The notes: generated from the letters alone by a model not told the origin. A DNA stretch of 64,000 nt from Octopus sinensis (GCF_006345805.1 NC_043003.1:116622001-116686000), one strand, 5' to 3'; shown: positions 16,315-64,000, numbered from the stretch's first letter. Numbers and translations are program-made.

Positions 16315-16436
16315 ATATATATATAAAATATTTCACTTTATCTCTCACAATATACTCAAATATATTTTGTTTGATACATGTCTTACTTTTGCAAATATTC
16401 TGTAATTTCCAATCTTCAACTTATTTTAGTATATAT

Positions 16437-16515
<79 letters not shown>

Positions 16516-16694: not shown

Positions 16695-17799
16695 ATGGAC
16701 ACAAAGAAAGAAAGAGAGGAAAGGAATACGAAAAACGGAAGCATTGTTCACTTAATGATACGTATGTATGTGTGTACGTCAATCCGTCTATTTGCCTGTT
16801 TGCGTATGTATAACAACCTGTTTCTTCCTAAGCAGCGGCTATATGATATCAAGCTAAATCTCACCACCTATAGACAATATAAGTGACTGCTCTCGCTAAG
16901 TAATAAAAACACTGCATCAGTGAAAAACTGCACTTGCCTTGTCTGAGAAGCTGCATTTAGGAATGGCGGTGATTTACCATAAATTCTGGCTAATGTTATC
17001 ACTGCGAACATTAAAAGCTTATTGATGTTCTGCCCTACAGGGGGGCGCACGCTGTAAAGTATGCTAGGTCACTGGAAAGAAATGCAATGAATGATGGATA
17101 GTGTAATAGTTAAAGGAGACGAGAACTTAATGAAACAAGAACAAAGAAAGACTAAAAGAATTTAATGATGGAAAGATAGAATGATTGCAATATGTAGGAA
17201 AAGAAATTGAAATACAACATGAGGCAAAAACAAATTGAAAAAGATTAAGAAAGGCAGAATGTGAGAGTTTAAATTTAGAGAAAGAACGAACTATATATAA
17301 AGGGAGAGAGAGATTGAAGAAATGAGAACGGCTGGAGTGAACTGAAGAACAGTAAACATACTAAAATAAGTTGAAGATTGGAAATTACAGAATATTTGCA
17401 AAAGTAAGACATGTATCAAACAAAATATATTTGAGTATATTGTGAGAGATAAAGTGAAATAGATTGGTTTATTTATTGATGTAGAGAGACAAAGAAAGAG
17501 AGGAAAAAAAAAAGGCAGGAGAGGAAGTTAGAAAGAAGTTTATTTCGCGAGAATGAGAAATAGAAATAAATAAGTATAAAGAGGTCGAATGTGATAGAAA
17601 ATGTGCAATAGTATTTTATCAGGTAATAAATAGCTGAATACGATGCGGGATATATGGCGTTCGCACACACACTTGCTCAAGCTTACACACGTGCATAAGT
17701 GTATATATATATATATATATATATACTTATGTGTGTGTATGGAATTTGTATATATATATGTATAAACGGCGGTGCATCAGCATGGCCGCAGCTCTGAGC

Positions 17800-20803: not shown

Positions 20804-21216
20804 GGCGGCGAGCTGGCAGAAACGTTAGCACGCCGGGTCAAATGCTTTGTGGTATTTCGTCTGCCGATACGATCTGAGTTCAAATTTAGCCGAGGTCGAC
20901 TTTGCCTTTCATCCTTTCGGGTCGATAAATAAAGTACCATTTTCACACTGGGGTCGATATAGTGGACTTAATCCGTTTGTCTGTCCTTGTTTGTGCCCTC
21001 TATGTTTAGCCCCTTGTGGATAGTAAAGAAATAGGTATTTCGTCTGCCGATACGATCTGAGTTCAAATTCTGCCGAGGTTGACGTTACCTTTCATCCTTT
21101 CGGAGTCGATAAATAAAGTACCAGTTTCGCACTGGGGTCGATATAATTGACTTAATCCGTTTGTCTGTCCTTGTTTTCCCCTCTGTGTTTAGCCCCTTGT
21201 GGGCAATAAAGAAATA
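20804..21216 (+). mobile_element. SINE family C, partial-dimer form
   Basis: Head GGCGGCGAGCTGGCAGAAACG; body repeated after GTAAAGAAATA; TSD TATCACG(T/A)ACAAAGATCA at 20777-20794 and 21217-21234. Confidence 0.9.
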
Positions 21217-21460: not shown

Positions 21461-21564
21461 AACGAAAATTTTAGGACAATAAAAAAAAAAACGTGGAAAT
21501 TTTACCGGTAAGTGTGTTACATAATAAGGCACAAAAAGAAAATGACTCTCCCCAGACACAACAG
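21461..21564 (+). repeat. Unclassified interspersed repeat family F, copy 1
   Basis: GGAAATTTTACCGGT..GGCACAAAAAGAAAATGACTCTCCCCAGA shared with 23241 and 40571 copies. Confidence 0.8.
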
Positions 21565-21609
21565 TATATATATGTGTGTGTGTATATATGTATATATATA
21601 TATATATAT

Positions 21610-22745: not shown

Positions 22746-23149
22746 CTCTTTTACTCTTTTACTCTTTTACTTGTTTAAGTCATTTGACTGCGACCATGCT
22801 GGGACACCGCCTTTTAATCAAGCAACTCGACCCCGGGACTTATTCTTTTTGTAAGCCCAGTACTTATTCTATCGTTCTCTTTTGCCGAACCGCTAAGTAA
22901 CGGGGACATAAACACACCAGCATTGGTTGTTAAGCAATGCTAGGGTTAGACACACACGCATATATATATATATATATATATACATATATACGACGGGCTT
23001 CTTTCAGTTTCCGTCTACCAAATCCACTCACAAGGCTTTGGTCGGCCCGAGGCTATAGTAGAAGACACTTGCCCAAGATGCCACGCAGCGGGACTGAACC
23101 CGGAACCATGTGGTTGGTAGACAAGCTACTTACCACACAGCCACTCCTG
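22746..23149 (-). mobile_element. SINE family B (full length, internal (TA)n)
   Basis: Head CAGGAGTGGCTGTGTGGTAAG, B box GGTTCAGTCCC, tail (GAGTAAAA)n. Confidence 0.9.
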
Positions 23150-23240
23150 TATATGTATATAATTCTTATGGAAGAGTATCGTTGACAGTGACTTCGAAGT
23201 TTTGGCCATTTAAGTCATCGTCGAATTGCCATAATTGGCA

Positions 23241-23379
23241 ATAAGAAATAAGTGGAAATTTTACCGGTGAGTGTGTTACATTATAAGGCACAAAAAGAAA
23301 ATGACTCTCCCCAGACACAACAGAATATACTTCTACACACGAAATCATATAAAGAATCTTGCAAACCAAATCCAAAAAC
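23241..23379 (+). repeat. Unclassified repeat family F, copy 2
   Basis: Aligns with 21461 copy and the reverse complement of the 40571 copy. Confidence 0.8.
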
Positions 23380-23905
23380 GAAATTTAGAGAGATTAATTG
23401 ATATAAGCGACATTATTTCACCGTACATAGATTATCTCGTGTTATAAATTTACCTCTGTAAATATCTTTCTTAACTCAATTGCTCACGAATTTTTTGTTC
23501 ATTTTCACAGTAAATTATCTTCATGCTCAAAAATCAACGAGGTACGATGAAATGTTATTTAAATTTCAGATTTTAACAGTATGTAGATTGAAATCTTTTT
23601 CCAATTTGATTAATATTTATCATTAATTGGAGCTTAGTTGCGAACTTTCTACAAACTCAGTTATACGCGACTAATACAATGTTTATATGAGAAAAGAAAA
23701 ACATTTTGACTGATCAGGATAGCAAAAGGATTTATATTCGAAATATATTGTGTTTATTGAAGGGCTTGCGCGCGCACGTATGTGCATGTGTGTGTGTGTG
23801 AATAAATGTATATGTAAGAATTTACATGGACATAAAAAATAAATAAGAACTTAAACCTATACGATGTATATGTATAAGTATATAAAAATGTGTATTTGTG
23901 TGTGT

Positions 23906-24665: not shown

Positions 24666-25549
24666 ATATATATAGATATTTACTTTGAAATCTCTGAGCG
24701 AAGAATATGCAGTAACAGTACCGTACAGTAAAGTCTATTTGCCAACGTAACCTGGCAATCCTACGCAGGATGATGTTACTACGTTTTAGCCCCAGAAAAA
24801 CATCTTTTCCAGCTGCCTGCCGACACATGATCGGTGTCCATATACTGTGAGCAAGGGAATCTACCGCTCCTCTTCTAGTCGCGGCGATACCTGTAGACCA
24901 GTTGTTTCTGGGAAATTTCCCTTCCTCTGTACAGGACAACCGCCGGTTACAGATAGCAGTCACTCGTTTATATATACATATACATATATGTATGTATATA
25001 CTGACACACCCAGATACATTTATTCATACATACAATTTCGAATCTTTGAATTATATATCTCCATATATGTATGCAGGTATCCATGCATTTATCAGGTTCG
25101 GGACGGAAGCTGTTCACTCACAAATAGTCACCACTGAAAAGGTTCAGGTAAATGTTGAGGATGAGAAATGAAAGGGTTGTTCATATACGGAGGAAGCCAT
25201 GCTTTTCTCTAATTTTCGTACTATGCTATGTATCATCGAACAAGTACGATCTGGCATCGAATTCTTTTACGCAAAACTCAGAATGACAAACAATGGCCAT
25301 ATTTACGACTGGGCTGTTAGATTACGTGAACTCTGCTCGTTAATTATAAATCCAGCAGATCGAGCACCGTGCTGCACTTTTCGCAGCAGGGCTTCACTGA
25401 TATATATTTCAGCGTTTCATGAGACACGGCCGTCTGCTTATTTAAATTACTCTGGTTTACAACTTCTTTTGAGGCGGTATCCTGTGAGATGAAAAACGAA
25501 ACAGTTGTTTTTGCTTTCACCCTGTGAAAATCCAATCTGATGAACGAGG

Positions 25550-25903
25550 TGTGAAGCCAACTTGTTCGTACCAATGGATCATTAAAAATCTCTCGTGGAA
25601 GCGCCATCCAACCAAAATGCAAATATATGGGAAACTACCACCTGTGTCATCTCTTTTGAAAGGTAGAAGAGTCCAGTTTGCTGGACATTGTTGTAGAGCT
25701 GAAAACGAGGTAATTTCTACTCTTCTCCTCTGGAAGCCATCTGCTCGCAATACCAGATGGCGCACACTCTCCTACCCTGATGTAATCTCCAGGGATACAG
25801 GCATCCAGCAACAGAACCTCCGTAATGCCATGATGGACCGTGAAGTCTGGCGTAGCATGGTAAATTCTATTGTCTCGACCATGGTTGAACAATGATGATG
25901 ATC
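25550..25903 (+). mobile_element. 5'-truncated RTE-type LINE 3' end with (GAT)n tail
   Basis: NLSWKRHPT..LPPVSSLLKGRRVQFAGHCCR..LLLWKP..LSYPDVISRDTG..AMMDREVWR; stop at 25895 runs into TGATGATGA. Confidence 0.8.
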
Positions 25904-34397: not shown

Positions 34398-34683
34398 ATT
34401 TTGGAAAGGGGACCAGTCGATTATATCGACTCCAATACACAACTGGTACTTAATTTATCGACCCCGAAAGGAAGAAAGGCAAAGTCGACCTCGTCGGAAT
34501 TTGAACTCAGAATGTAGCGGCAGACGAAATACTGCAAAGCATTTCGCCTAGTGTGCTAACGTTTCTTATTTCTCCATTGCCCACAAAGGGCTAAACACAG
34601 AGAGGACAAATAAGGACAGACAAAGGGATTAAGTCGATTACAGCGACCCCAGTGCGTAACTAGTTCTTAATATATCGACCCCA
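34398..34683 (-). mobile_element. SINE family C, rearranged/tandem fragments
   Basis: Two consecutive family C segments joined at GAAATAA|GAAACGTTAGCAC (minus strand). Confidence 0.75.
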
Positions 34684-34723
34684 AACACTACTTCGATTAA
34701 ATTTTTACCGATAGAGATCAGCA

Positions 34724-37702: not shown

Positions 37703-38104
37703 CAAGTGGTTAATGGTATTGGTCAATTCGATTTCCTACACCACTGGTGAAAATGTCACTGTACCGCTGAGACATTATTTATCGAGCATTGCAACACAAG
37801 TAAAGCAACAGCAACGTCTTTAGAAGATGACTGAAGGATCGCATTTTTGTCAGTCGTTCTGTTAACTGTGTTGATGACAAAAGTGTCACAAAGTATCCTC
37901 GTCTTTGACAATAGTGTTCTTAAAGTTTTGCTTTTTAATCCGACTTATCACTCGCAGACAAAATCAACAATATTTAAATACACACAAATACATACATAAA
38001 TCAAAATATAATTCCTAATTCTGCTTCACCACGTCACTTGAGTTATATTTACACCTACACAAACACCAAGCAGAAAACATCATTTGATTTGTTTCAGCAA
38101 AACA

Positions 38105-38260
38105 GGCGCAGGAGTGGCTGTGTGGTAAGTAACTTGCTAACCAACCACATGGTTCAGTCCCACTGCGTGGCATCTTGGGCAAGTGTCTTCTGCTATAGCC
38201 CCGGGCTGACCAATGCCTTGTGAGTGGATTTGGTAGACGGAAACTGAAAGAGGCCTGTCG

Positions 38261-38342
<82 letters not shown>

Positions 38343-38569
38343 TTGTATGTCCATGTTTGTCCCCCTAGCATTGCTTGACAACCGAAGCTGGTATGTTTAC
38401 GTCCCCGTCACTTAGCGGTTCGGCACAAGAGACCGATAGAATAAGTACTGGGCTTACAAAGAATAAGTCCCGGGGTCGATTTTCTCGACTAAAGGCAGTG
38501 CTCCAGCATGGCCGCAGTCAAATGACTGAAACAAGTAAAAGAGTAAAAGAGTAAAAGAGTAAAGAGTAA
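38105..38569 (+). mobile_element. SINE family B (full length)
   Basis: GGCGCAGGAGTGGCTGTGTGG head; internal (TA)n(TG)n; (GAGTAAAA)n tail. Confidence 0.9.
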
Positions 38570-38953: not shown

Positions 38954-39487
38954 GGCACAGGAGTGGATATATGGTAAGAAGCTTGCTTCCCAACCACATG
39001 GTCCCCGTTTCAGTCCCACTGCGTGGCCTCTTGGGCCAGTGATTTCTGCTATAGCCTCGGGCCGATCAAAGCTTTGTGAGTGGATTTGGTAGAAGGAAAC
39101 AGCAAGAAGCCCGTCTTATATATTTATTATATACTAATGTGTGTGTTTGTCACCATCGCTTGGCAACCTATTTCTTTACTACCCACAAGGAGCCAAACAC
39201 AGAGGGGACATCAAGGACAGACAAACGGATTAAGTCGATTATATCGACCCCAGTGCATAACTGGTACTTATTTAATCGACCCTGAAAGGATGAAAGTCAA
39301 AGTCGACGGCTAAGCATTTCGCCCGGCGTGCTAACGTTTCTGCCAGGTCGCCGCCTTGACAACCGATGCTGCTGTGTTTATGTCCCCGTAGCTTAGCGGT
39401 TCAGCAAAAATACGATAGAATAAGTACTAGGTTTATTAGGTCAATTTCTTTGACCTAATAAATGACTGAAACAAGTAAAAGAATAAA
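38954..39487 (+). mobile_element. SINE family B with nested family C insertion
   Basis: Host B sequence resumes after 39354. Confidence 0.8.
39169..39354 (-). mobile_element. SINE family C (internally deleted) nested in family B
   Basis: TSD CTTG(G/A)CAACC at 39159-39168 and 39355-39364. Confidence 0.85.
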
Positions 39488-39715: not shown

Positions 39716-39935
39716 GTTGCACATTGCAGTCAACCGGGTAACAAAATGTTTTGGCCACATTATAGAGAAGACGAAACATTCGTGGATTTCTTTTATCTCT
39801 ACCACATTGATTATCAAAACTCAATATTATTTTAAAAAGTTACAATGGTTATAATTCTGATAACGTCCGTTGCTCTTAAATGCTGTACAATATTTAGTTT
39901 GCACTTAACCCTTTAGTGTTTAAACCGGCCATATA

Positions 39936-40345
39936 CTCTTTTACTCTTTTACTTGTTTCAGTCAAGTGACTGCGGCCATGCTGGAGCACCGCCTTTAGTC
40001 GAGCAAATCGACCCCGGGACTTATTCTTTGTAAGCCCAGTACTTATTCTATCGGTCTCTTTTTTGCCGAAGCGCTAAGTGATGGGGACGTAAACACACCA
40101 GCATCGGTTGTCAAGCAATGCTAGGGGGACAAACACAGACACACAAACACACACACACATATATATATAAATATACATATATACGACAGGCTTCTTTCAG
40201 TTTCCGTCTACCAAATCCACTCACAAGGCATTGGTCGGCCCGGGGCTATAGCAGAAGACACTTGCCCAAGATTCCTCGCAGTGGGATAGAACCCGGAACC
40301 ATGTGGTTGATAAACAAGCTACTTACCACACAGCCACTCCTGCGC
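39936..40345 (-). mobile_element. SINE family B (full length)
   Basis: As the 22746 copy. Confidence 0.9.
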
Positions 40346-40570
40346 AAATATTCTATATGTTTTATATTCAAACTGGCTAGATCTGGCCTCTAACACCTAA
40401 CCTACATTGACATTCTAAAAATAAACAATCGCAATCATTGAAACCTCAAAGCTAGAAGATAATGCATGATTAATTCAAAACAATTTGAGTGAGAATGTAT
40501 TACATTTAACAGAGTAATCTGAACACTAAACGGTTAAATATCTTTTCGAAGAGAATTCAACGAATACTTT

Positions 40571-40785
40571 GTTTTTGGATTTGGTTTGCAAGATTCTTTA
40601 TGTGAGTTCCTGTGTTGAAGCATATTCTGTTGTCTCTGGGGAGAGTCATTTTCTTTTCGTGCCTTATAATCTAACAGACTCACCGGTAAAATTTCCTCTT
40701 ATTTCTTATTTTTATTTTCCTAAAGTTTTCGTTTCAACGAAATACTATTCCATATTTCGTTTCAACGAATACTATTCTATATTTT
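40571..40785 (-). repeat. Unclassified repeat family F, copy 3
   Basis: Reverse complement of the 23241 copy; short tandem duplication TTTCGTTTCAACGAA(A)TACTATTC. Confidence 0.8.
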
Positions 40786-40795
40786 TGGGGCGGGG

Positions 40796-41065
40796 GATGA
40801 GGAATTATGGACATTATTTACAATGGACGGATAGGTGACCATATTGTTTGTTGTTATCACAATGTTTCGGCTGGTGTATTCTACCCTTCATCGGGTGTTC
40901 TTGTGGAATTTCGAAACCAAACCCTTTATTTGACTAATGGGGTACTCTGTTCTCATTCCTAAGGTCTGTTGCTGATATTAATTGTCTATTGATATTATTT
41001 TTCAAGTCCCTGCCTGGATTTGAACTAAGAATCCGAGGGATAGTAGCCCGCGCTCTTATTCACTA
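40796..41065 (-). mobile_element. SINE family E (tRNA-like head, hammerhead-bearing tail)
   Basis: Minus: TAGTGAATAAGAGCGCGGGCTAC..AGTTCAAATCC head; CAC-CCGATGA-A..CCAGCC-GAAAC-ATT-GTG at 40858-40897; tail ATCCGTCCATTGTAAATAATG..AATTCCTCATC. Confidence 0.75.
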
Positions 41066-41283
41066 AGTTCAATACCAAGCAGGGACTTGAAAAATAATAT
41101 CAACAGACAATTAACATCAGCAACAGACCTTAGGAATGAGAACAGTTTTTACTCCGTTAGTCAAAAAAAGGGTTGGGTTTGAAATTTCACCAGAACACCT
41201 GATGAAGGCTGGAGAGTACACCAGCCAAAACGTTGTGATAACAACAAACAAGATGATAAGACCTATCCGTCCACTGTAAATAA
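41066..41283 (+). mobile_element. Inverted second copy of SINE family E (B box to tail)
   Basis: Reverse complement of 40814-41026, about 85% identical by hand alignment. Confidence 0.85.
41196..41237 (+). ncRNA. Minimal type I hammerhead motif in SINE E (G12 mutated to A)
   Basis: CAC-CTGATGA-A-GGCTGG agagtaca CCAGCC-aAAA-CG-TT-GTG: perfect 6-bp stem II, palindromic ACGT stem III, GUU site. Confidence 0.65.
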
Positions 41284-41431
41284 GAATTCAATGAACATCA
41301 AGAATATGACGTTTTGGCCTCTTTCAACTTTGACCCGAAAATGGTTCTCACAAGTAATTGATTAATAAAAATTTGAATTGAAATAAAAAAAGAAGTGACA
41401 ACTGATATTATTTTAAATGCATTTATTGATA

Positions 41432-41640
41432 CTCTTTACTCTCTCTCTTTTACTCGTTTACATGCTGGAGCACCGCCTTTAGTCGAGCAAATCGACCCCA
41501 GGACTTATTCATTGTAAGCCCAGTATTATTCTATCGGTCTATTTTGCCGAACCGCTAAGTGACGGGGACGTAAACAAACCAGCATCGGTTGTAAAGCAAT
41601 GCTAGGGGGACAAACACGGACATACAACACATACATATAT

Positions 41641-41722
<82 letters not shown>

Positions 41723-41882
41723 CGGGCTTCTTTCAGTTTCCGTCTACCAAATCCACCCACAAGGCATTGGTCGGCCCGAGGCTATAGCAGAAGAATCTTG
41801 CCCAAGGTGTCACGCAGTGGGACTGAACCCGGAACCATGTGGTTGGTTAGCAAGCTACTTACCACACAGCCACTCCTGCGCC
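41432..41882 (-). mobile_element. SINE family B (full length)
   Basis: As other B copies; long internal (TA)n. Confidence 0.9.
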
Positions 41883-42413
41883 TTTATTCAGATAAAATGT
41901 ATTGAAAATTTAAAACAAGTACTTCCTCTTAAAATGAAATGATTATACATTGCATGGATGCATATCTGTCGGAATAAAATGTATGGATCACGGGTTTCAT
42001 ATATTTCAGTACGCGAGGAAGGCATGAACATCACTGTTTCGCATGTGAATAAACAGGTAAAATCTTCGTATTAAAATAAAAACCAAATGAATAATATTTC
42101 AGAAGTTGTAACAACAAATGTAGATTAAAAGGTAAGTTTTTAGAAATCTGAGACATTTCTTTGTTTCAAATATTTCAATAGATTTTATAACAGCGCCGTT
42201 TGTGACGTTCTGTTTAGATTTTAGATTCTGATAGAATTGTATGACATCATAATATGCGATGTAATCTTTTGATGCCATAAGACTGGTTCAGGCTGGGAAC
42301 AGAATCAATAGGACTTAAGAAGTCCATACACAAATATATAGACACACCTACGCACACAAACACACAAGCAAGAATCAAAACATACATAAACACGCACACA
42401 CACACACACACAC

Positions 42414-48086: not shown

Positions 48087-48490
48087 CAGGAGTGGCTGTG
48101 TGGTAAGTAGCTTGCTAACCAACCACATGGTTCCAGGTTCAGTCGCACTGCGTGGCATCTTGGGCAAGTGTCTTCAGCTATAGCCCCGGGCCGACCAATG
48201 CCTTGTGATTGGATTTGGTAGACGGAAACTAAAAGAAGCCAGTCGTATATATATATATGTATATGTGTGTGTGTGTTTGTGTGTCTGTGTTTGTCCCCCT
48301 AGCATTGCTTGACAACCGATGCTGGTGTGTTTACGTCCCTGTCACTTAGCGGTTCGGCAAAAGAGACCGATAGAATAAGTACTGGGCTTACAAAGAATAA
48401 GTCACGGGGGCGATTTGCTCGACTAAAAAGGCGGTGATCCAGCATGGCCGCAGTCGAATGACTGAAACAAGTAAAAGAGTAAAGAGAGTA
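48087..48490 (+). mobile_element. SINE family B (full length)
   Basis: As other B copies. Confidence 0.9.
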
Positions 48491-49727
48491 TACGAAGCAT
48501 GAAAGCTATGAAAAAGAGTTAGATATAAACATTGCATAATGAATCTAAGTTTAAACGTGAGAATATGTTCATGAATATTTGCTTCTAGTGTATAATATGG
48601 GAAGGATATAGAATGGTGTCGTGTGTTTGTGGCTGTAAGTTTCGGCACATATATAACTATTATAACGAAGCTTCTGGTTGGCTGAGTGACGTAATGGAGG
48701 GAAGGAAGAAAATGTATACACTTGGAAAGATGTATGTAACAGTGCACGGGTGTATACACAAGGGTGTGTGATTATTTACGCGCACACACATATACACATA
48801 AATATAAAGTACGTGTATAAATGTTGGGTTTCGTTATATCGTGTCTATTCGCTTTCAATAACATTCTCTCTCTCTCTCCTTCTGTGTATACATGTGCGTA
48901 CGTAGGTATATATAATGGAACTAACGCTATGTTAAAGACAATGTAAAACGAATACAGAGATAAAAATAAAAATAAAAAAAAGTGTGGACGTATATACCAC
49001 ATGAGAGGAATGCAAAAAGAATAGAAACAAATGTTTAAAAAAATGGAAATTCGAATTGCGACTGTAGGCAGGAAAAACGAATTTTGGTGACGCGACTGCA
49101 AATCAAAAGCAATAACGGTCAAAGAATAACACAAGGAATTCTATGAAATCTTGAGTTAACTATCTTAATGCTTTGTGGGTTAGGATTCCAGATAGATTAA
49201 AGGTTTTGCTTCTCTACAAAACGGTCCCTTCTGATGGAATTCTTTAATGTATACCGTCGGCTTTAGTTTTGGCTTGTTACAGTTTTCTTTTCTCTTTAAT
49301 GTACGTTTTCCCTCGCCTCCATTCATGCTACTGTTGCATTTTTCTTTTCTTTTTGTTTTTGCTAGTGCCATGGTTGTGATGGTTGTTGTTGCTGGTGGTG
49401 ATGGTGGCAGTGAGGTGTTCTATTTTTATTCTTGTATGTCTGTTCTTTTTTTCTTCTTCAGGCTTTTCGTTCTTATTTCTCTGTTTCTCTTCCAACCAAC
49501 ATCCAGTTCAACTAGTTTTCCAGAAATGACATATAATTGTATGTATTATCTATATGAGGTGGCCACGATACACTTGGGAATTGGCACATGCATCACAAGC
49601 ACAGAAACACACACAGAAAATACAAACACGTATATACACATAGATACACGCATGTCTGTGTATATAAATATATACATGTATATACATATATACGCACACA
49701 AATATACATATATACACACAAACATTC

Positions 49728-50766: not shown

Positions 50767-50767
50767 C

Positions 50768-50921
50768 TTTGTTTCTTTTCTGTGTATCTTTCTGTCGAAG
50801 AGCGTAGGCTCAAAACTTAAAAGACTTGTTCTATTTCTATTCCTGAGCGCCATACTAATACACTTGTTTCTTTTTACTTCACCTGCCTTCGTCTTTTGTT
50901 TATTTTTGTAAACCTTCCCGT
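50768..50921 (+). mobile_element. Solo Penelope pLTR fragment with degenerate hammerhead (50788-50823)
   Basis: CTTT-CTGTCGA-A-GAGC gtag GCTC-aAAAC-tT-A-AAAG; same family as the end of the 52655 element. Confidence 0.7.
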
Positions 50922-51510: not shown

Positions 51511-52208
51511 CCAATATATGTTTGTCAGTTAGCAGAACAGTTGATGTTTTATCAAGTTCCAAGTACAAATTATTTTTTTAGCGTTAACGAAAATGCGTCC
51601 GTTGCGGTGAACGACAGAAAAAAAGATATTGGAGCCAAAATACTCAGGTTTTGTGTGTCTGTGATAAATATGTGTGTCAGCAATGAGAGCAACCTTGAGT
51701 GGCGTACATTCTTTTTTCAGTCTGCTGGCTAAAGCTGTGTCACGTACGCTGTCTTTCTCATGGCATTCTGTAGCGGAGGTTGAGTAGCGGAGGTTGAGTA
51801 GTTCTTACAGCAACTGGTCGTGGTTTGGTTGTGACCACTGACTAATTAAGTGGCGCACTATCTATATATATGAAGCTAATATTTCTCAGAAAGGCACTGG
51901 AGACGAAACTGCGAATGAGGTTTCAATTTGCTGCATGTCCCAAGCACTTACTTTGCAACACTGGGCTTCTTATGAGTTAAACATCTGTAGATTCCGTTGT
52001 TTATTTCTCTGGGCAAATTATCTGCGAATGAAAAACAAAAAGCAAATCCTTAATATGTTTATCAGAGACTGACACACGTCGTCAACCCTTGTCACCATCT
52101 TGTCTATTTAATTCTTTTTATGGATTTTTATGACCGACTATAATGATTCAGGTTAGATACCGAAGGCGGGTGTTTGTTTCTGGGTCTGCCAAATATTCCT
52201 GCCATATA

Positions 52209-52630
52209 CTCTCTCTTTTACTTGTTTCAGTCATTTGACTGCGGCCATGCTGGAGCACCGCCTTTAATCGAGCAACTTGACCCCGGGACTTATGTTTTTG
52301 TAAGCCCAGTACTTATTCTATCGGTCTCTTTTGCCGAACCGCTAATTAACGGGGACATAAACACACCAGCATCGGTTGTCAAGCAATGCTAGGGGGACAA
52401 ACACACTCACACAAACACACACACGCATATATATTTATATACATATATATATATATATACATATATACGACGGGCTTCTTTCAGTTTCCGTCTACCAAAT
52501 CCACTCACAAGGCTTTGGTCGGCCCGAGGCTATAGCAGAAGACACTTGCCCAATGTGCCACCCAGTGGGACTGAACCCGGAACCATGTGGTTGGTAAACA
52601 AGCTACTTATCACACAGCCACTCCTGCGCC
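52209..52630 (-). mobile_element. SINE family B (full length)
   Basis: As other B copies. Confidence 0.9.
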
Positions 52631-52654
52631 TATATATGTGTATATATATATATA

Positions 52655-54285
52655 TATTTGCTTTTTTTCCTGCAACAACTAGACTCCTTCCTCTTTTTTA
52701 TCCATTCCTTCCATCCTGCCCTCCATTTCTCCTGCACCATATCCAACACTTCCGTCGCCTTTCTTGACATTTCGGTCAACATACGCAACTCCTACCTCCA
52801 TCCACCACAAACACGGATTTACACTCATACCTCAACTTGTCCTCCCCCCACCCTACCCACATCATGCTCTCCATCCCCTAATCCCAATTCCTCCGTCTGC
52901 GCAGGCTCTGCAGTGACAACCATGACTTTGAGACTGTCTCAACTCATAACTCGCCACTTCAACCTTCGTGGATATCCTCTCACCACTATCCACACCGCCC
53001 TTGCTAGAGCACGTTCAGTGGGCTGTGCCTCTGATCTCTCCTTGCACACGCCCTGCTGCTGCTCATCTCCCGTTTCCTCTCACCTACCACCCCTCCATCC
53101 TTCTCCAACGCACTATTCCACGAGCCTTCCGGTGACTCCAGCTCGATTCCAGCAATAGTCCTGGTTCACAGTCTCTTCCCTAGCCTAATCTACCAAGCTG
53201 GCTCGGTCCACTGCTCACGCCCACACTGCCGCACTTGTCCCTGCCTCTCCAACACCACCCTTCTCACAGGCACCCATCATCTTCCCTATCATATCATTGA
53301 CTCCTTTACCTGCACTTTTACCAATCTCATTTTCTTCATCTCCTGCTATTTCTGCCCTTCTCTGTACATCGGTCAAACGGGATGCCGCTTGGCTGATCGC
53401 TTCGCGGCGCCTCTCCGAGACATTAGGCTCGGCAATGGCGCTCGGTCTAGCGTCATTTCCGCTCAACTGGTCATTCATTAATTACAACACCCGTTTGTAT
53501 TCGGACAATCTTTGCACAGGGGCCATCCAAACTCCCACCTTTGTCGTGAACCGGAATTAATCTTCTTTCTTCGCTTCTTTGTACCATATGGGCTCAACTC
53601 TCCTCCCCTCTTCATCTGATACCTACTTCTTCTCTTCGCTTTCCCCTCTTTTGCCCTGACACCTGCTTCCTCTCTTCACTCCTACGCACCTTCTCCTTTC
53701 ATTGATACAGCCTCCATCCACCCCACACATACCTACCCCTATCCCCGGCACCTCCACCTCCATACTCACCCCACATCATCACCTCACCTCACAACCTCAC
53801 CCCTACATCCTCGTTACGAACACCACCACACTCTCATTCCAACCCCTCCAGGAGCACACATTAGCAGTGATCACCTTCCCACACCCACACCATCGTCTGT
53901 TCACCCACATATTACAAATGCACATATCCACACGTCAAGTTACACGCACACATCCACACGTCAAAATCACCAGCCCATACCCACACATACACACACACTC
54001 TCACATACACATACGCAAGCGCACCTTAGTTTTAGGATCACCAGTACTTTATTATCTGCCCTTCTTCCCAGCTCTCCTATCCAACTGCCTTTTTCCAACC
54101 AGTCTCCATGATTGAGCGCTAAATTCACAAGATTTTTTTTATTCCCTCTCTGTTTATTTCCTCGTGTTCCTTTCTGCTGAAGAGTGTAGGCTCGAAACGT
54201 AAAAGACTTTCTCACCTTCCCGAGCGTCAAACTTATACACCTGTCTTCGTCTCTTGTTCTTCTTTAAATTTCACGATGGATAATG
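52655..54285 (+). mobile_element. Penelope-like element, 5'-truncated: RT C-terminus, GIY-YIG endonuclease, 3' pLTR (frameshifted)
   Basis: FHPALHFSCTISNTSVAFLDISV; SQFLRLRRLCSD..FNLRGYP..ALARAR; CSRPHCRTC; NLIFFISCYFCPSLYIGQTGCRLADRF; ELIF..PYGLN. Confidence 0.9.
54170..54205 (+). ncRNA. Minimal type I hammerhead motif in the Penelope pLTR (A6 to C variant)
   Basis: CTTT-CTGCTGA-A-GAGT gtag GCTC-GAAA-CG-TA-AAAG; palindromic ACGT, GUA site. Confidence 0.65.
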
Positions 54286-55321: not shown

Positions 55322-55490
55322 TGGGAGAGTTTACGAAAAAACAAAAGACGAAGACAGGTGGTGTACAAAACAAACAGATGTATTAGTATAAAGCTCAGGG
55401 ATAGAAAAAGTCTGTTACGTTTCGAGCCTACGCTCTTCTACAGAAAGGGTCACAGAAAAAAAACAAAGAGAGAAACATGGAGAGAAAAAA
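55322..55490 (-). mobile_element. Solo Penelope pLTR fragment with hammerhead motif (55412-55447)
   Basis: Minus: CTTT-CTGTAGA-A-GAGC gtag GCTC-GAAA-CG-TA-ACAG. Confidence 0.7.
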
Positions 55491-55528
55491 ATGTATGTAG
55501 TGGCTAACGATCAATCATGGCGATCTAC

Positions 55529-59056: not shown

Positions 59057-61311
59057 TTCGCGTTTGGGTTGCTGTTATTTGTTTTAATAACGATAATAGA
59101 ACCTGTAGAGTGTTCCAAAATCTGTATACCTCTGCATTCTATCTCCTCTCGCCACTTCCCTTCTCCTTTTTAGTTTCCGCTCGAAAAGACAACGAATTTT
59201 CAAGGAAACGGTCGTTGCAGTGATTAAGGGATATGATCGGCAACGATATTTTCCACATGATACCTATCAATGTTGGTCATTTGCGAACGTGCAAAACGAC
59301 GGTTTTGTTTAGATTTATCGCTTTAATACTACCTAAATGAGAATACTCCGTGATCCAAAATCTACGCCACGTTAATTTTTCTGGATGACGTTTTCTCGGA
59401 GCGTAAATTGAACAACACATATTTAATTATATTTCGGTTACAAACACCAGAATTATAGGCATTTCTTAAACAGGTAAGTTTGTGATTTAGTGTCACACGT
59501 TTACGCAGAGACACACAGACATACACGCACGCACGTACATACATGTATACGCATGGAGTATATATATATTTGTGTATATATGCATGTACCCAGTGTGATG
59601 GAGGAGTAGGGCGTACGCAAGTGCATCGTATATCTATCTTTCTAGATATCTTGCCATATATATTTCTATCCATTTATCAGAAATTCAATCAACCTAGCTA
59701 TCGATTTATCATTATCACACTCGTTATTTTCTTCTAAACCTTCGTTACAGTGTTGCGCACATGCATACAGATACACATGCACACATGCATACACACGCAC
59801 ACAAACATGTATGCACACACACACATATAGTGGTATTTGCATACAGTGATCACAATATGTGTATACGTGTATGTATGTATGTATGTGCGTAGATACCGAT
59901 GCATGTATGTATATATGTATATATGTGTGTATATATGTATGTATATATGTATGTATGTATGTATGTATGTGTGTATATATGTATGTATGTACGTATGTAT
60001 CTATGTATGTATGTATATATGTATGTATGTATGTATGTAATGTATGTATGTATGTAATGTATGTATGTATGTATGTGTGTATGTATGTATGTATGTATGT
60101 ATGTATGTATGTATGTATGTATGTGTATGTGTATGAGCTCTTCTGTGAATCTACGTGAAGTTTCAGTATATGAATAATATTATACACTGTTTAATTAGTG
60201 TGTGTCTATCCATTTCTCAATCTAACTATATATCTGTCTGTTTGTCTGTTCTTCCCTGTCTTCACATTTATCTCGGTGTCTTCTTTAGCAGACCGTTAAG
60301 CCCACAAGCAGTGAAGGATAATATAACATGTCGTGTGCCGGTGATAAACATTAACTTTCTTCAGCCTATGCAAGAGAGTACAGACTAAATGACTAATAAT
60401 AACAGGTTTCTTACATAGCTTCTCAAGTAAATATCTACGTCATGTTTTTCTTCTATCTCCCATTTCCCGACGATGTGCAATGGCGCTCGTAGCAGAAGCA
60501 AGAAATGCAGCCATTTTCTTTTCTCTTATAAAGTTTTCCAGTTGTCAGCTTTTTGCCTACTGTGTTATTTTTATTACATTTTAGAGTTTCATTTTCATTA
60601 TTACAACGTATTTATCCATGCAACATGTTTATTTCAATAACATGTCGAATTTTCTCGCCCTATATAAAAATTTCCAACGTCTGATGTGTACATTGGCAAA
60701 TAGTAATTTTATAGAAATTACAAATAAAATGGAACATCACGTTGATTCTTCACTGGCCAATCAACAACATCTAACTTATACTGTTTCTTCTGTTAGAATC
60801 TAGAGATGTTTTAAAAGAAATACACAATACACTGGAGGAAAATGGTATGAATTATCTGGTTTCATGAGACGGATACCACATCTGGTGTTGTTTAGTTTTT
60901 ACTTTTGTTTTCGTATTTGTGTAACTTATGGGAAATACTAGTTATTACTTTTTGTTAGGAAATGAGCACGCTTCGTACGGTATGTGTGAGTGTTGTTCTA
61001 TGGCTTTATGTCGATTGGTGATCGTGTTAACTAGCGCTGTGTGGGTGACTTGCTTGTATGATATGAATTCTTGTTTGTGATAATATTGATTATATACACA
61101 CATGTGTTGCATTACTTAATAGAGCAGAGTGTTTTTTCGTAATCACCCTAAAATATATCTGTTGGGTGAGTTGCTGCACTTATTCATTTTAAAAGATATC
61201 TGTGATATTCCTTAGAAAGTGTCTTAGGAAGGGTGTGGGCTATGCAATACGCTTAAAATAGACACCCATATTCAATATTTCTAGATGTTTTCTAAGAATT
61301 CCTTAACAATA

Positions 61312-61482
61312 GGCATAGGAGTGACTGTGTGGTAAGTAGCTTGCTTACGAACCACATGGTTCCGGGTTCAGTCCCACTGCGTGACACCTTGGGCAAGTGT
61401 CTTCTACTATAGCCTCGAGCCGACCAAAGCCTTGTGAGTAGATTTGGTAGACGGAAACTGAAAGAAGCCTGTCGTATATATG

Positions 61483-61521
<39 letters not shown>

Positions 61522-61716
61522 CTGTGTTTGTCCCCCCAACAACGCTTGACAACCGATGCTGGTATGTTTACGTCCCCGTATCTTAGCGGTTCGGCGAAAG
61601 AGACCGATAGAATAAGTACTAGGCTTACAAAGAATAAGTCCTGGGGTCGATTTGCTCGACTAAAGGCGATACCCCAGCATGGTCACAATCAAATGACTGA
61701 AACAAGTAAAAAATAA
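61312..61716 (+). mobile_element. SINE family B (full length)
   Basis: As other B copies. Confidence 0.9.
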
Positions 61717-61884
61717 ATAAATAGCAATCATTTATTTGCAGATCCCAGTTTTGATAGTTTCTGGGACATGTCGGTATCCATAAAAATAATTTGTTAATTA
61801 TCTTACAGAAATGGTTGCGTGCCCCTCCAGTTCTACCAATTAGCTATTGACAACAAAACACAGTCTACTTTCAATTCTATATCT

Positions 61885-61999
61885 AAGAGATGAGGAATTA
61901 TATATAGTATTTACACTTTTTACATTTGACGGATATGGCGTAGTGGTCAAGAGCGCGAGCTACTCACCCCAGCATTCCGAGTTCGATTTCAGACAGTGA

Positions 62000-62034
<35 letters not shown>

Positions 62035-62111
62035 TGATAATAATAATAATATAATAATAATAATAAAATGATGATAATGATAATAATAATAATAATAATA
62101 ATAATAAAATG

Positions 62112-62143
<32 letters not shown>

Positions 62144-62332
62144 AAGAAGAAGAAGAAGAAGAAGGAGAAGAAGAAGAAGAAGAAGATCGAAAAATACCTT
62201 AGGAATGAGAATCCAGGTACGAAATTTCCCCAAGACACCTGATGAAAGCTAGAGAGTATATTAACCAAAAGGTTGTGTTAACAAAAAAGAAGATGAGGAC
62301 AAATATCCGTCAAATGTAAATAATGTATATTC
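61885..62332 (+). mobile_element. SINE family E: inverted tail piece, tRNA-like head, (AAT)n(GAA)n, body, hammerhead motif, tail
   Basis: A box TGGCGTAGTGG (61936), B box GAGTTCGATTTC (61979); ACAC-CTGATGA..GTT-GTGT at 62235-62278 (stem II and GAAA eroded); 61885-61936 is the reverse complement of the family's 3' tail. Confidence 0.8.
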
Positions 62333-62339
62333 TACTTTA

Positions 62340-64000
<1,661 letters not shown>

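What the first reader, a model, noticed from the sequence alone, without database searches (positions are those of the whole stretch)
40814..41283. 470-bp fold-back formed by two SINE E copies, each with a hammerhead
Seen: arms 40814-41026 and 41066-41283 (about 85% identical) with a 39-bp spacer holding the tRNA A-box region; both share a short middle that is a long microsatellite in the 62-kb copy. Each arm's HHR has different lesions, and their consensus restores CUGAUGA-A-GGCUGG..CCAGCC-GAAAC-GUU. Established: PLE insertions often have inverted terminal copies; coleoids have extensive A-to-I editing of dsRNA. Inference: one insertion event, datable from arm divergence, and a potential ~210-bp dsRNA substrate.
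Basis: partly seen in the sequence, partly recalled or inferred. Interest (0 to 1): 0.72.

Follow-up and report, generated by a model that had tools for sequence, protein, structure and literature searches.

The report
Decayed fold-back SINE insertion, octopus
Two copies of a small octopus retroposon carrying a broken hammerhead-ribozyme motif sit head-to-head, with the layout that Penelope-like retroelements leave after a single insertion; it is an old, ordinary repeat insertion whose only likely effect is to form a long RNA hairpin if it is transcribed.

Summary
Window 40814-41283 is a head-to-head inverted pair of one retroposon family. The arms match at about 87% over about 220 nt. As RNA it folds into a near-perfect hairpin (-308.6 kcal/mol, z = -25.6).

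The "spacer" is not filler. It is the A-box to B-box stretch of the longer, minus-strand copy. The plus-strand copy is cut off at its B box.

Each arm carries a minimal type-I hammerhead-like motif of the Penelope-like element (PLE) kind, and each is broken. The plus arm has one lesion (G12 to A); the minus arm has three.

A single insertion is supported. The only other family copy (61937-62328) has the same layout, with a roughly 20-nt inverted 3' fragment. Both units carry a roughly 40-nt homologous "tail" on the inverted copy, and each unit has one candidate 12-bp target-site duplication around it. This matches published PLE insertion architecture.

Arm divergence (K2P 0.116) gives roughly 16 My.

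Caveats:
- Restoring G12 in the consensus needs a CpG-aware choice; plain majority gives A.
- Rfam finds no hammerhead.
- No further copies, partner PLE, transcription or editing could be checked.

Verdict: a new member of a known kind, of modest interest.

The parts
40761..40772 (.). Candidate left target-site duplication of the fold-back unit (TTCAACGAATAC)
   Evidence: Matches 41287-41298 at 9/12; all three mismatches are transitions. An anchored test against random window positions gives p about 0.04. Weak on its own.
40774..40813 (-). About 40-nt 'tail' extension beyond the 3' end of the minus-strand copy
   Evidence: It contains ATAATTCCTCATC (40796-40808) and ATATAGAAT (40774-40782). 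Both recur at the same relative place next to the inverted fragment of the 62-kb unit (61889-61901, 61874-61882). The 13-mer occurs nowhere else in the window. PLE tails of 30-40 bp on one inverted copy are described in PMC8557442 and PMC3846280.
40814..41069 (-). Longer copy of the retroposon ('SINE E'), 3' end at 40814 and 5' end inside the A box at about 41065-41069
   Evidence: It aligns to the 62-kb copy from 61941 onward. 3' terminal motif TATCCGTCCATTGTAAATAA at 40814-40833. B-box-like GTTCAAATCC at about 41016-41028. A-box remnant TTAGTGAAT at 41059-41067.
40858..40897 (-). Hammerhead-like motif of the minus copy, three lesions
   Evidence: Sense strand reads CAC-CCGAUGA-A-GG--GU...CCAGCC-GAAAC-AUU-GUG. 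Lesions are U4 to C (40893), a 2-nt deletion in helix II, and G16.2 to A. It keeps G12.
41059..41069 (.). Head-to-head junction with overlap or microhomology
   Evidence: ATTCACTAAGT reads as the start of the plus copy (compare ATTC-TTAGTTCAA in the minus copy). Its reverse complement, ACTTAGTGAAT, reads as the A-box end of the minus copy. There is no filler DNA. A 15-bp overlap at such junctions is described for Penelope in PMC3846280.
41063..41286 (+). Shorter copy of the retroposon, 5'-truncated at the B box, with an intact 3' end
   Evidence: 86.8% identical to the minus copy. B-box-like AGTTCAATACC at 41067-41077. 3' motif TATCCGTCCACTGTAAATAA at 41264-41283. No tail is detectable beyond it.
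41196..41237 (+). Hammerhead-like motif of the plus copy, one core lesion
   Evidence: CAC-CUGAUGA-A-GGCUGG-(8-nt loop)-CCAGCC-AAAAC-GUU-GUG. A replaces G12 at 41227. The predicted cleavage site would lie after 41234. It is one of two window hits with at most one core lesion, and the only one with a 6-bp helix II; chance expects 0.1.
41287..41298 (.). Candidate right target-site duplication (TTCAATGAACAT)
   Evidence: Pairs with 40761-40772.
61862..61873 (.). Candidate left TSD of the second unit (AGTCTACTTTCA)
   Evidence: Matches 62329-62340 at 10/12; anchored test p about 0.014.
61874..61915 (-). About 42-nt tail of the second unit
   Evidence: Shares the 13-mer and the 9-mer with the tail of the fold-back unit.
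61916..61936 (-). Inverted, extremely 5'-truncated copy: only the last about 20 nt of the element
   Evidence: TATCCGTCAAATGTAAAAAG, 2 mismatches to the family 3' motif. 61905-61936 is 87.5% complementary to 62303-62334.
61937..62328 (+). Forward copy of the family: tRNA-like head, 183-bp microsatellite (62004-62186), and a 3' module with a decayed hammerhead-like motif (62236-62277)
   Evidence: A box TGGCGTAGTGG at 61936-61946 matches the consensus at 11/11. B box AGTTCGATTTC at 61980-61990 matches at 9/11. The 3' module is 80% identical to the plus arm.
62329..62340 (.). Candidate right TSD of the second unit (ATTCTACTTTAA)

Best explanation
The fold-back is the fossil of one retrotransposition event of a non-autonomous octopus retroposon. 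The element has a tRNA-like Pol III head, a short or microsatellite middle, and a roughly 190-nt 3' module with a minimal type-I hammerhead motif. Its insertion machinery was most likely that of a Penelope-like element.

**Inferred mechanism.** At a staggered break, both exposed 3'-OH ends primed reverse transcription from the 3' end of element RNA. This could be 'twin priming' on two templates, or the self-priming plus template jump that Arkhipova proposed. Two cDNAs then grew towards each other and stopped at different points, one inside the A box and one at the B box. They were joined through a few nucleotides of microhomology. The result is two outward-facing intact 3' ends, inner 5' truncations, an extra roughly 40-nt tail on one side, and one roughly 12-bp target duplication.

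**What happened since.** The arms have drifted apart by about 11% in substitutions. This corresponds to roughly 16 My at the octopus rate quoted in the literature. Both hammerheads are now inactive by sequence.

**What it does today.** It has no element-level function. Only one strand of any transcript carries a sense hammerhead, and that motif would be buried in the hairpin. A read-through transcript would form a roughly 215-bp, roughly 89%-paired dsRNA, a plausible ADAR or small-RNA substrate.

**Status of each step.** Shown: the anatomy, the fold, the motif and its lesions, and the replication of the architecture in a second unit. Inferred: PLE mobilisation, the priming mechanism, the age, and any RNA-level consequence.
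For: - **Arms and fold:**
- **Spacer:** it is the head of the longer copy.
- **Family 3' ends:** all four in the window occur as two inverted pairs.
- **Tail:** the 13-mer is found only at the outer end of the inverted copy of both units (chance 0.15 even with one mismatch allowed). A 9-mer sits at the same offset.
- **TSDs:** candidates lie exactly outside the tail and outside the 3' end in both units (p 0.04 and 0.014).
- **Hammerhead motif:** the plus arm has a bulged nucleotide after position 9, a G10.1-C11.1 pair, a 6-bp helix II, no helix III with a palindromic C15.2-G16.2, and a short helix I. These are the hallmarks listed for PLE min-HHRs in PMC4209133. Chance expectation is 0.1 per window.
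- **Literature on architecture:** an inverted 5'-truncated copy plus a 30-40-bp tail at one end (PMC8557442). A 31-bp tail at the 3' end of one inverted pLTR, a 15-bp overlap at the junction, 8-10-bp TSDs, and head-to-head as the commonest form (PMC3846280). Paired min-HHRs on opposite strands 100-700 bp apart in S. mansoni.
- **Partners exist:** the window is octopus (a LINE-like ORF is 82-91% identical to O. bimaculoides proteins). Octopus genomes hold recently active Penelope families (PMC13282606).
- **Not an assembly artefact:** an artefactual palindrome would have near-identical arms; these differ by 11-13%.
Against: - No autonomous PLE with the same 3' end was available, so mobilisation by a PLE rests on architecture and on the ribozyme motif alone.
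- No extant copy has an intact hammerhead core. Rfam hammerhead models give no hit even at E <= 10.
- With three sequences, covariation is not significant: one compensatory pair, reached by 243/500 shuffles.
- G12 is in the minority (1 of 3 copies).
- The TSDs are short and imperfect, and a 27-bp tandem duplication (40727-40784) overlaps the left one.
- ARAGORN and Rfam do not recognise the head as a tRNA.
- Only two insertion units could be examined. Both metagenome scans and one viral scan found no further copies.
Confidence: 0.72

Rival explanations
1. Two independent insertions. A second copy of the family landed exactly at the 5' end of an older copy. PLEs are said to insert into or next to existing copies, so the arm divergence would reflect different source copies and different ages.
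For: The arms differ by 11-13%, which could come from two templates. Only one arm has the tail. The review PMC6765202 notes that PLEs tend to insert into or beside pre-existing copies. The TSD evidence is weak.
Against: The two copies abut with overlap and no intervening or split sequence. No TSD surrounds the plus copy alone. The second unit in the window shows the same inverted-fragment, tail and TSD layout with only a 20-nt inverted piece, which is hard to obtain by an independent insertion. Both arms share sub-type features that the 62-kb copy lacks.
Confidence: 0.13
2. Post-insertion inverted duplication. A single copy and some flank were duplicated in reverse by replication template switching or hairpin-primed repair, unrelated to retrotransposition.
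For: Palindromic duplications do arise this way. Microhomology at the centre (41059-41069) would fit. The outer flanks show weak, non-significant similarity.
Against: Flank similarity beyond the element ends is not significant (p 0.16-0.97). The arms end at the element's own 3' terminus on both sides. The tail is homologous to that of an unrelated locus. The same layout occurs in the second unit.
Confidence: 0.05
3. A terminal-inverted-repeat DNA transposon (MITE-like or Foldback-like) that merely contains SINE-like sequence.
For: Both units have terminal inverted repeats (20 to about 250 nt) and short flanking direct repeats.
Against: The inverted part varies from 20 to 250 nt between units and always starts at the same 3' end, as 5'-truncated cDNAs do. 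There is a Pol III A/B-box head and a hammerhead-like motif. A candidate TSD of about 12 bp is not a length I know from TIR superfamilies (my own knowledge, not checked here). The extra sequence (tail) sits on one side only.
Confidence: 0.03
4. The hairpin has been co-opted as a functional RNA, for example a long-hairpin small-RNA precursor or a regulated ADAR-editing platform. This does not exclude the origin given above.
For: The hairpin is very stable. Octopus shows exceptional hyper-editing and dsRNA potential, and Penelope elements are massively edited in lizard (PMC5625713).
Against: There is no expression data. Rfam microRNA matches lie far below their gathering scores (79.6 against 245 bits) and are generic long-hairpin matches. 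The arms have drifted at about the neutral rate with uncompensated indels.
Confidence: 0.07

Closest known systems
Penelope-like element insertion units (pLTR with an adjacent inverted 5'-truncated copy and a 30-40-bp tail; Evgen'ev & Arkhipova; PMC3846280, PMC8557442)
   Same: Head-to-head inverted copies with intact outward 3' ends, variable inner 5' truncation, overlap at the junction, a roughly 40-nt tail on one inverted copy only, a short TSD around the whole unit, and a hammerhead motif near the 3' end.
   Different: There is no RT or GIY-YIG ORF. The body is a roughly 250-390-nt non-coding unit with a tRNA-like Pol III head. No direct (tandem) pLTR is present. The partner PLE is unknown.
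Minimal type-I hammerheads of metazoan PLEs (Cervera & de la Pena 2014, PMC4209133)
   Same: CUGAUGA core, one unpaired nucleotide before a long (6-bp) helix II starting with G10.1-C11.1, GAAAC-GUH with no helix III and a palindromic C15.2-G16.2 (so a dimeric mode of action is expected), and a short helix I. Pairs of motifs on opposite strands 100-700 bp apart were noted there.
   Different: Every copy here has at least one core lesion. Activity is untested. Rfam models do not detect them.
Sm-alpha / Sj-alpha SINE-like retroposons of Schistosoma (Ferbeyre 1998; Laha 2000; summarised in PMC6765202 and PMC2770079)
   Same: A tRNA-derived Pol III-promoted short retroposon that carries a hammerhead ribozyme and is very abundant in the genome.
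   Different: Those carry a canonical hammerhead shown to be active in vitro (per PMC6765202) and are often found within repetitive sequences. Here the motif is the minimal PLE type, the host is a cephalopod, and the copies form fold-backs. Sequence homology was not tested.
Non-LTR retrozymes of animals (PMC7229834; bioRxiv 10.64898/2026.07.22.740005)
   Same: Short non-autonomous elements with type-I hammerheads, argued to derive from PLE pLTRs.
   Different: Retrozymes are defined by head-to-tail tandem repeats that yield circular RNAs. This family shows no tandem copies in the window and has a tRNA-like head.
L1 twin-priming inversions (Ostertag & Kazazian 2001; cited from memory)
   Same: Both DNA ends at the target prime reverse transcription, and the two cDNAs are joined by microhomology, giving an inverted junction.
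   Different: In L1 the second primer anneals internally on the same RNA, so the two parts are different segments. Here both arms contain the same 3'-terminal sequence.

Membership tests
PLE-type (Penelope-like) insertion unit, non-autonomous | Inverted 5'-truncated copy directly adjacent, head-to-head, to another copy | tested here: met
   the second unit.
PLE-type (Penelope-like) insertion unit, non-autonomous | [quoted passage not shown] | tested here: met
   40-nt and 42-nt extensions sharing a 13-mer and a 9-mer in both units. They are absent or undetectable on the other side.
PLE-type (Penelope-like) insertion unit, non-autonomous | One short target-site duplication around the whole composite | tested here: inconclusive
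   9/12 and 10/12 matches at the predicted positions, p 0.04 and 0.014. They are short, imperfect, and were judged partly after the fact.
PLE-type (Penelope-like) insertion unit, non-autonomous | 3' end shared with an autonomous RT/GIY-YIG element of the same genome | not testable with these tools
   No PLE ORF was seen in the window. No octopus genome sequence was reachable.
Hammerhead ribozyme, type I, minimal PLE variant | Intact catalytic core CUGANGA ... GAAA ... UH | tested here: not met
   No perfect motif in the window. The plus arm has A at position 12; the minus arm has C at position 4 and A at 16.2; the 62-kb copy has several changes.
Hammerhead ribozyme, type I, minimal PLE variant | [quoted passage not shown] | tested here: met
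   All present in the plus arm. Criteria are from PMC4209133.
Hammerhead ribozyme, type I, minimal PLE variant | Match to curated covariance models | tested here: not met
   No Rfam hammerhead hit at gathering score or at E <= 10.
Hammerhead ribozyme, type I, minimal PLE variant | Covariation supporting the helices | tested here: inconclusive
   89% of cells paired and one compensatory pair, but only 3 sequences; 243/500 shuffles do as well.
Hammerhead ribozyme, type I, minimal PLE variant | Self-cleavage | not testable with these tools
   Needs in vitro transcription of monomeric and dimeric constructs.
tRNA-derived SINE | Internal Pol III A and B boxes at tRNA-like spacing | tested here: met
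   62-kb copy: A box 11/11 and B box 9/11, 44 nt apart. The loose pattern alone is not rarer than chance in the window. The minus arm keeps the B box and half the A box; the plus arm keeps only the B box.
tRNA-derived SINE | Recognisable tRNA cloverleaf | tested here: not met
   ARAGORN finds none. No Rfam tRNA hit at E <= 10.
Non-LTR retrozyme | Head-to-tail tandem repeats each carrying a hammerhead | tested here: not met
   The family has no tandem copies in the window.
microRNA precursor (Rfam MIR2646, MIR4208 and others) | Score at or above the family gathering threshold | tested here: not met
   79.6 against 245 bits, and 45.5 against 140 bits. These are plant families matching a generic long hairpin.

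The most novel reading that the evidence does not exclude
Hammerhead-bearing SINEs in octopus that are mobilised by PLEs may often be inserted as ready-made fold-backs. If so, this one class of retroposon would supply the genome with thousands of intrinsic long dsRNA hairpins. That could be a major cause of the exceptionally high dsRNA potential and ADAR hyper-editing reported for octopus, as Penelope elements appear to be in lizard.
Probability: 0.2. Interest if true: 0.6.

Novelty: new member of a known kind. Interest (0 to 1): 0.33.

Why it matters
On its own the locus is a dead repeat. Its value is as a clean, small example that shows every hallmark of PLE-type insertion in 540 bp: head-to-head copies, a one-sided tail, junction overlap and a single TSD.

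It also indicates that octopus has a tRNA-headed SINE family that probably uses the Penelope machinery and carries the PLE minimal hammerhead. If a genome-wide census confirms frequent fold-backs, the family would be a convenient system for two questions. One is how PLE reverse transcription produces inverted structures. The other is how much of cephalopod hyper-editing and dsRNA load comes from such built-in hairpins rather than from chance neighbouring inverted repeats.

Tried and rejected
- **More family copies.** Two exact-pattern scans of metagenome contigs and one of viral contigs found nothing, including with a pattern that matches all three window copies. A look-up of the closest O. 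bimaculoides protein found no contig on record. The protein search returned octopus proteins only from UniRef and Metaclust, with no contig on record. No genome-wide census was therefore possible.
- **Literature search by sequence string.** It found nothing relevant.
- **Rfam.** No hammerhead or tRNA match. Only sub-threshold microRNA hairpin matches, rejected as generic.
- **Longer palindrome.** I tested whether it extends 50-80 nt past the element ends. Local alignments of the four flanks are not significant, so only the 13-mer and 9-mer tail homology is kept.
- **Empty-site reconstruction.** I used paralogues of the older repeat on the left flank (40568-40733 against 23240-23383 and 21461-21569). 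The paralogues diverge before the insertion point.
- **Thermodynamic folding of the hammerhead segments.** Monomers and dimers reproduce helix II but do not test the catalytic fold.
- **Protein content.** Long ORFs in the window are translated microsatellites or LINE remnants; none has a significant Pfam match (one SAP18 hit, 16.6 bits, lies below the 27-bit cut-off) and none is a PLE protein.

Full report
**1. What is there**

Window 40814-41283 is a genuine inverted repeat. BLAST aligns 41066-41283 (+) with 41026-40814 (-) at 86.8% over 219 columns (E 5e-65). A more permissive alignment gives 192 identities in 222 columns with 7 gap columns. Gapless extension brings the inner arm ends to 41029 and 41063, 33 nt apart.

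Folded as RNA, 40790-41310 forms one long hairpin. The MFE is -308.6 kcal/mol, against -121.6 +/- 7.3 for dinucleotide shuffles (z = -25.6). The arms differ by 23 substitutions and several small indels, so this is not an assembly palindrome.

**2. What the arms are**

The only other related sequence in the 64-kb window is at 61937-62328. It has four parts:
- A tRNA-like Pol III head. The A box TGGCGTAGTGG matches the consensus at 11/11, the B box AGTTCGATTTC at 9/11, and they lie 44 nt apart.
- A 183-bp (AAT)n/(GAA)n microsatellite.
- A 3' module ending in ...TATCCGTCAAATGTAAATAA.
- No recognisable cloverleaf. ARAGORN and Rfam do not call the head a tRNA, so "tRNA-derived" rests on the promoter boxes.

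A three-way alignment gives these results:
- The minus-strand copy of the fold-back runs from its 3' end at 40814, through the "spacer", to about 41065-41069 inside the A box.
- The plus-strand copy starts only at the B box, at about 41063.
About 5-11 nt at 41059-41069 can be read as belonging to either copy. There is no filler.
- Both arms share a short middle of about 45 nt in place of the microsatellite, and a roughly 30-nt segment missing from the 62-kb copy. They are the same sub-type and each other's closest relatives.

**3. The hammerhead motifs**

The plus arm reads CAC-CUGAUGA-A-GGCUGG-AGAGUACA-CCAGCC-AAAAC-GUU-GUG (41196-41237). Except for A in place of G12 (41227), it satisfies my descriptor for a minimal type-I hammerhead. 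It also shows the features that Cervera and de la Pena list as hallmarks of PLE min-HHRs:
- a G10.1-C11.1 pair;
- a long helix II;
- no helix III, with a palindromic 15.2-16.2;
- a short helix I.

Random sequence of the same composition yields 0.1 such motifs (at most one lesion) per 64 kb. It yielded none in 60 trials with a helix II of at least 6 bp.

The minus arm (40858-40897) has U4 to C, a 2-nt deletion in helix II, and G16.2 to A, but it keeps G12. The 62-kb copy is more decayed. All three single-base lesions in the arms lie at CpG sites.

There, two of the three copies have A. G is recovered only by arguing that CpG decay hit two copies independently.

Rfam hammerhead models give no hit even at E <= 10. 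With three sequences the covariation test is uninformative: one compensatory pair, reached by 243/500 shuffles. The motif is therefore homologous to PLE-type hammerheads by its anatomy, but no copy here can be called an active ribozyme.

**4. One event or two**

Four observations favour one event.
- **The copies abut head-to-head with overlap.** Neither copy is split.
- **The family's ends always come in inverted pairs.** All four 3' ends in the window occur as two such pairs. The 62-kb unit also has an inverted 3'-terminal fragment, only about 20 nt long, directly in front of its forward copy (61916-61936). An independent 20-nt insertion there is implausible.
- **Both units carry the same extension on one side.** Beyond the 3' end of the inverted copy there is an extra 40-42 nt. 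It holds the same 13-mer, ATAATTCCTCATC (40796-40808 and 61889-61901, the only two occurrences in the window), and the same 9-mer, ATATAGAAT, at matching offsets. The right-hand flanks of the two units are unrelated, so this is element-derived sequence and not a shared target.
- **Each unit has one candidate TSD pair.** I fixed the tail boundaries from that homology first. Then I found direct repeats exactly outside the tail on the left and 3-5 nt past TAAATAA on the right. These are TTCAACGAATAC / TTCAATGAACAT (9/12) and AGTCTACTTTCA / ATTCTACTTTAA (10/12). The anchored tests give p about 0.04 and 0.014.

These four features are what Arkhipova and colleagues describe for Penelope-like elements:
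- an inverted 5'-truncated copy next to the element;
- a 30-40-bp tail at the 3' end of one inverted copy;
- overlap or palindromes at the junction;
- short TSDs, and head-to-head as the usual form (PMC8557442; PMC3846280).

Paired min-HHRs on opposite strands 100-700 bp apart were already noted in Schistosoma.

**5. Organism and age**

A LINE-like ORF in the window is 82-91% identical to Octopus bimaculoides proteins, so the window is from an octopus. Octopus genomes contain many Penelope families, some recently active (PMC13282606).

The arms have p = 0.107 and K2P = 0.116 (12 transitions, 11 transversions). That paper quotes JC 0.09 as about 25 My and 0.2 as about 56 My, which is about 0.0036 per site per My per lineage. 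At that rate the insertion is about 16 My old, provided both arms were identical at birth.

**6. How it works now**

Nothing suggests a current function.
- The plus copy lacks an A box, and the minus copy has half of one.
- The two hammerhead motifs lie on opposite strands, so a single transcript carries only one in sense. They cannot form the cis dimer that the minimal hammerhead is thought to need.
- In the predicted hairpin the sense motif is fully paired with its complement.
- The realistic consequence is passive. If the locus is transcribed as part of a longer RNA, it would form about 215 bp of about 89%-paired dsRNA.
- Porath et al. found octopus to have the strongest hyper-editing signal and an exceptional density of potential long dsRNA. 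They found Penelope to be the one massively edited LINE-class repeat in lizard (PMC5625713).

**7. Comparison and novelty**

tRNA-promoted short retroposons with hammerheads have been known since Sm-alpha and Sj-alpha (PMC6765202, PMC2770079). PLE min-HHRs and PLE fold-back insertions are well described. Animal retrozymes have been argued to derive from PLE pLTRs.

I found no paper describing such a family in cephalopods. The locus is best called a new member of a known kind.

**8. Limits**

I could not reach any other octopus sequence. The genome-wide frequency of fold-backs, the family consensus, the partner PLE, orthologous empty sites, expression and editing all remain open.

Noticed in passing
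window 54174-54205 (+); related copies 55374-55523 (-) and 50767-50867 (+): A second, unrelated repeat family carries a PLE-style minimal hammerhead-like motif: CTTT-CTGYNGA-A-GAGC/GCTC-GAAAC-GTA-AAAG. Core position 6 is U or C, not the invariant A, in all three copies. It is either a decayed motif or a non-canonical core variant.
   Followed up: partly
window 6479-6799 (-), 20851-21216 (+), 34415-34685 (-), 39169-39307: A 183-bp SINE-like unit with a B-box-like GAGTTCAAATT occurs as head-to-tail partial dimers at three of its four loci. This is another layout reminiscent of PLE partial tandems or retrozymes. My scan found no hammerhead core in it.
   Followed up: partly
window 40727-40784: A 27-28-bp tandem duplication (2.1 copies, 93% identical) lies immediately left of the fold-back. 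It spans the candidate left TSD and the first bases of the tail. It may be a later slippage event or a by-product of the insertion.
   Followed up: partly
window 38104-38553 (-), 39925-40345 (+), 41461-41887 (+); also 22746-23149, 48087-48492, 52198-52635, 61308-61717: An abundant roughly 420-bp SINE family brackets the fold-back. The copies at 38104-38553 and 39925-40345 are inverted, about 91% identical and 1.4 kb apart, which is another potential long dsRNA.
   Followed up: partly
window 16329-16438 and 17352-17461: A 110-nt inverted repeat, 98% complementary, with arms 913 nt apart. Not examined.
   Followed up: no
window 40951-41141: Rfam plant microRNA models (MIR2646 at E 4e-17, MIR4208, MIR2655) match the hairpin far below their gathering scores. 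This shows how such fold-backs can be mis-annotated as microRNA precursors.
   Followed up: yes
window 2254-2694, 3219-3695, 25488-25892: Remnants of LINE-type ORFs. The first is 82-91% identical to Octopus bimaculoides 'uncharacterized' proteins, which identifies the source as an octopus. The last looks like the C-terminus of an RTE-type element.
   Followed up: partly
window 6910-7009: A run of 100 N, which is an assembly gap.
   Followed up: no
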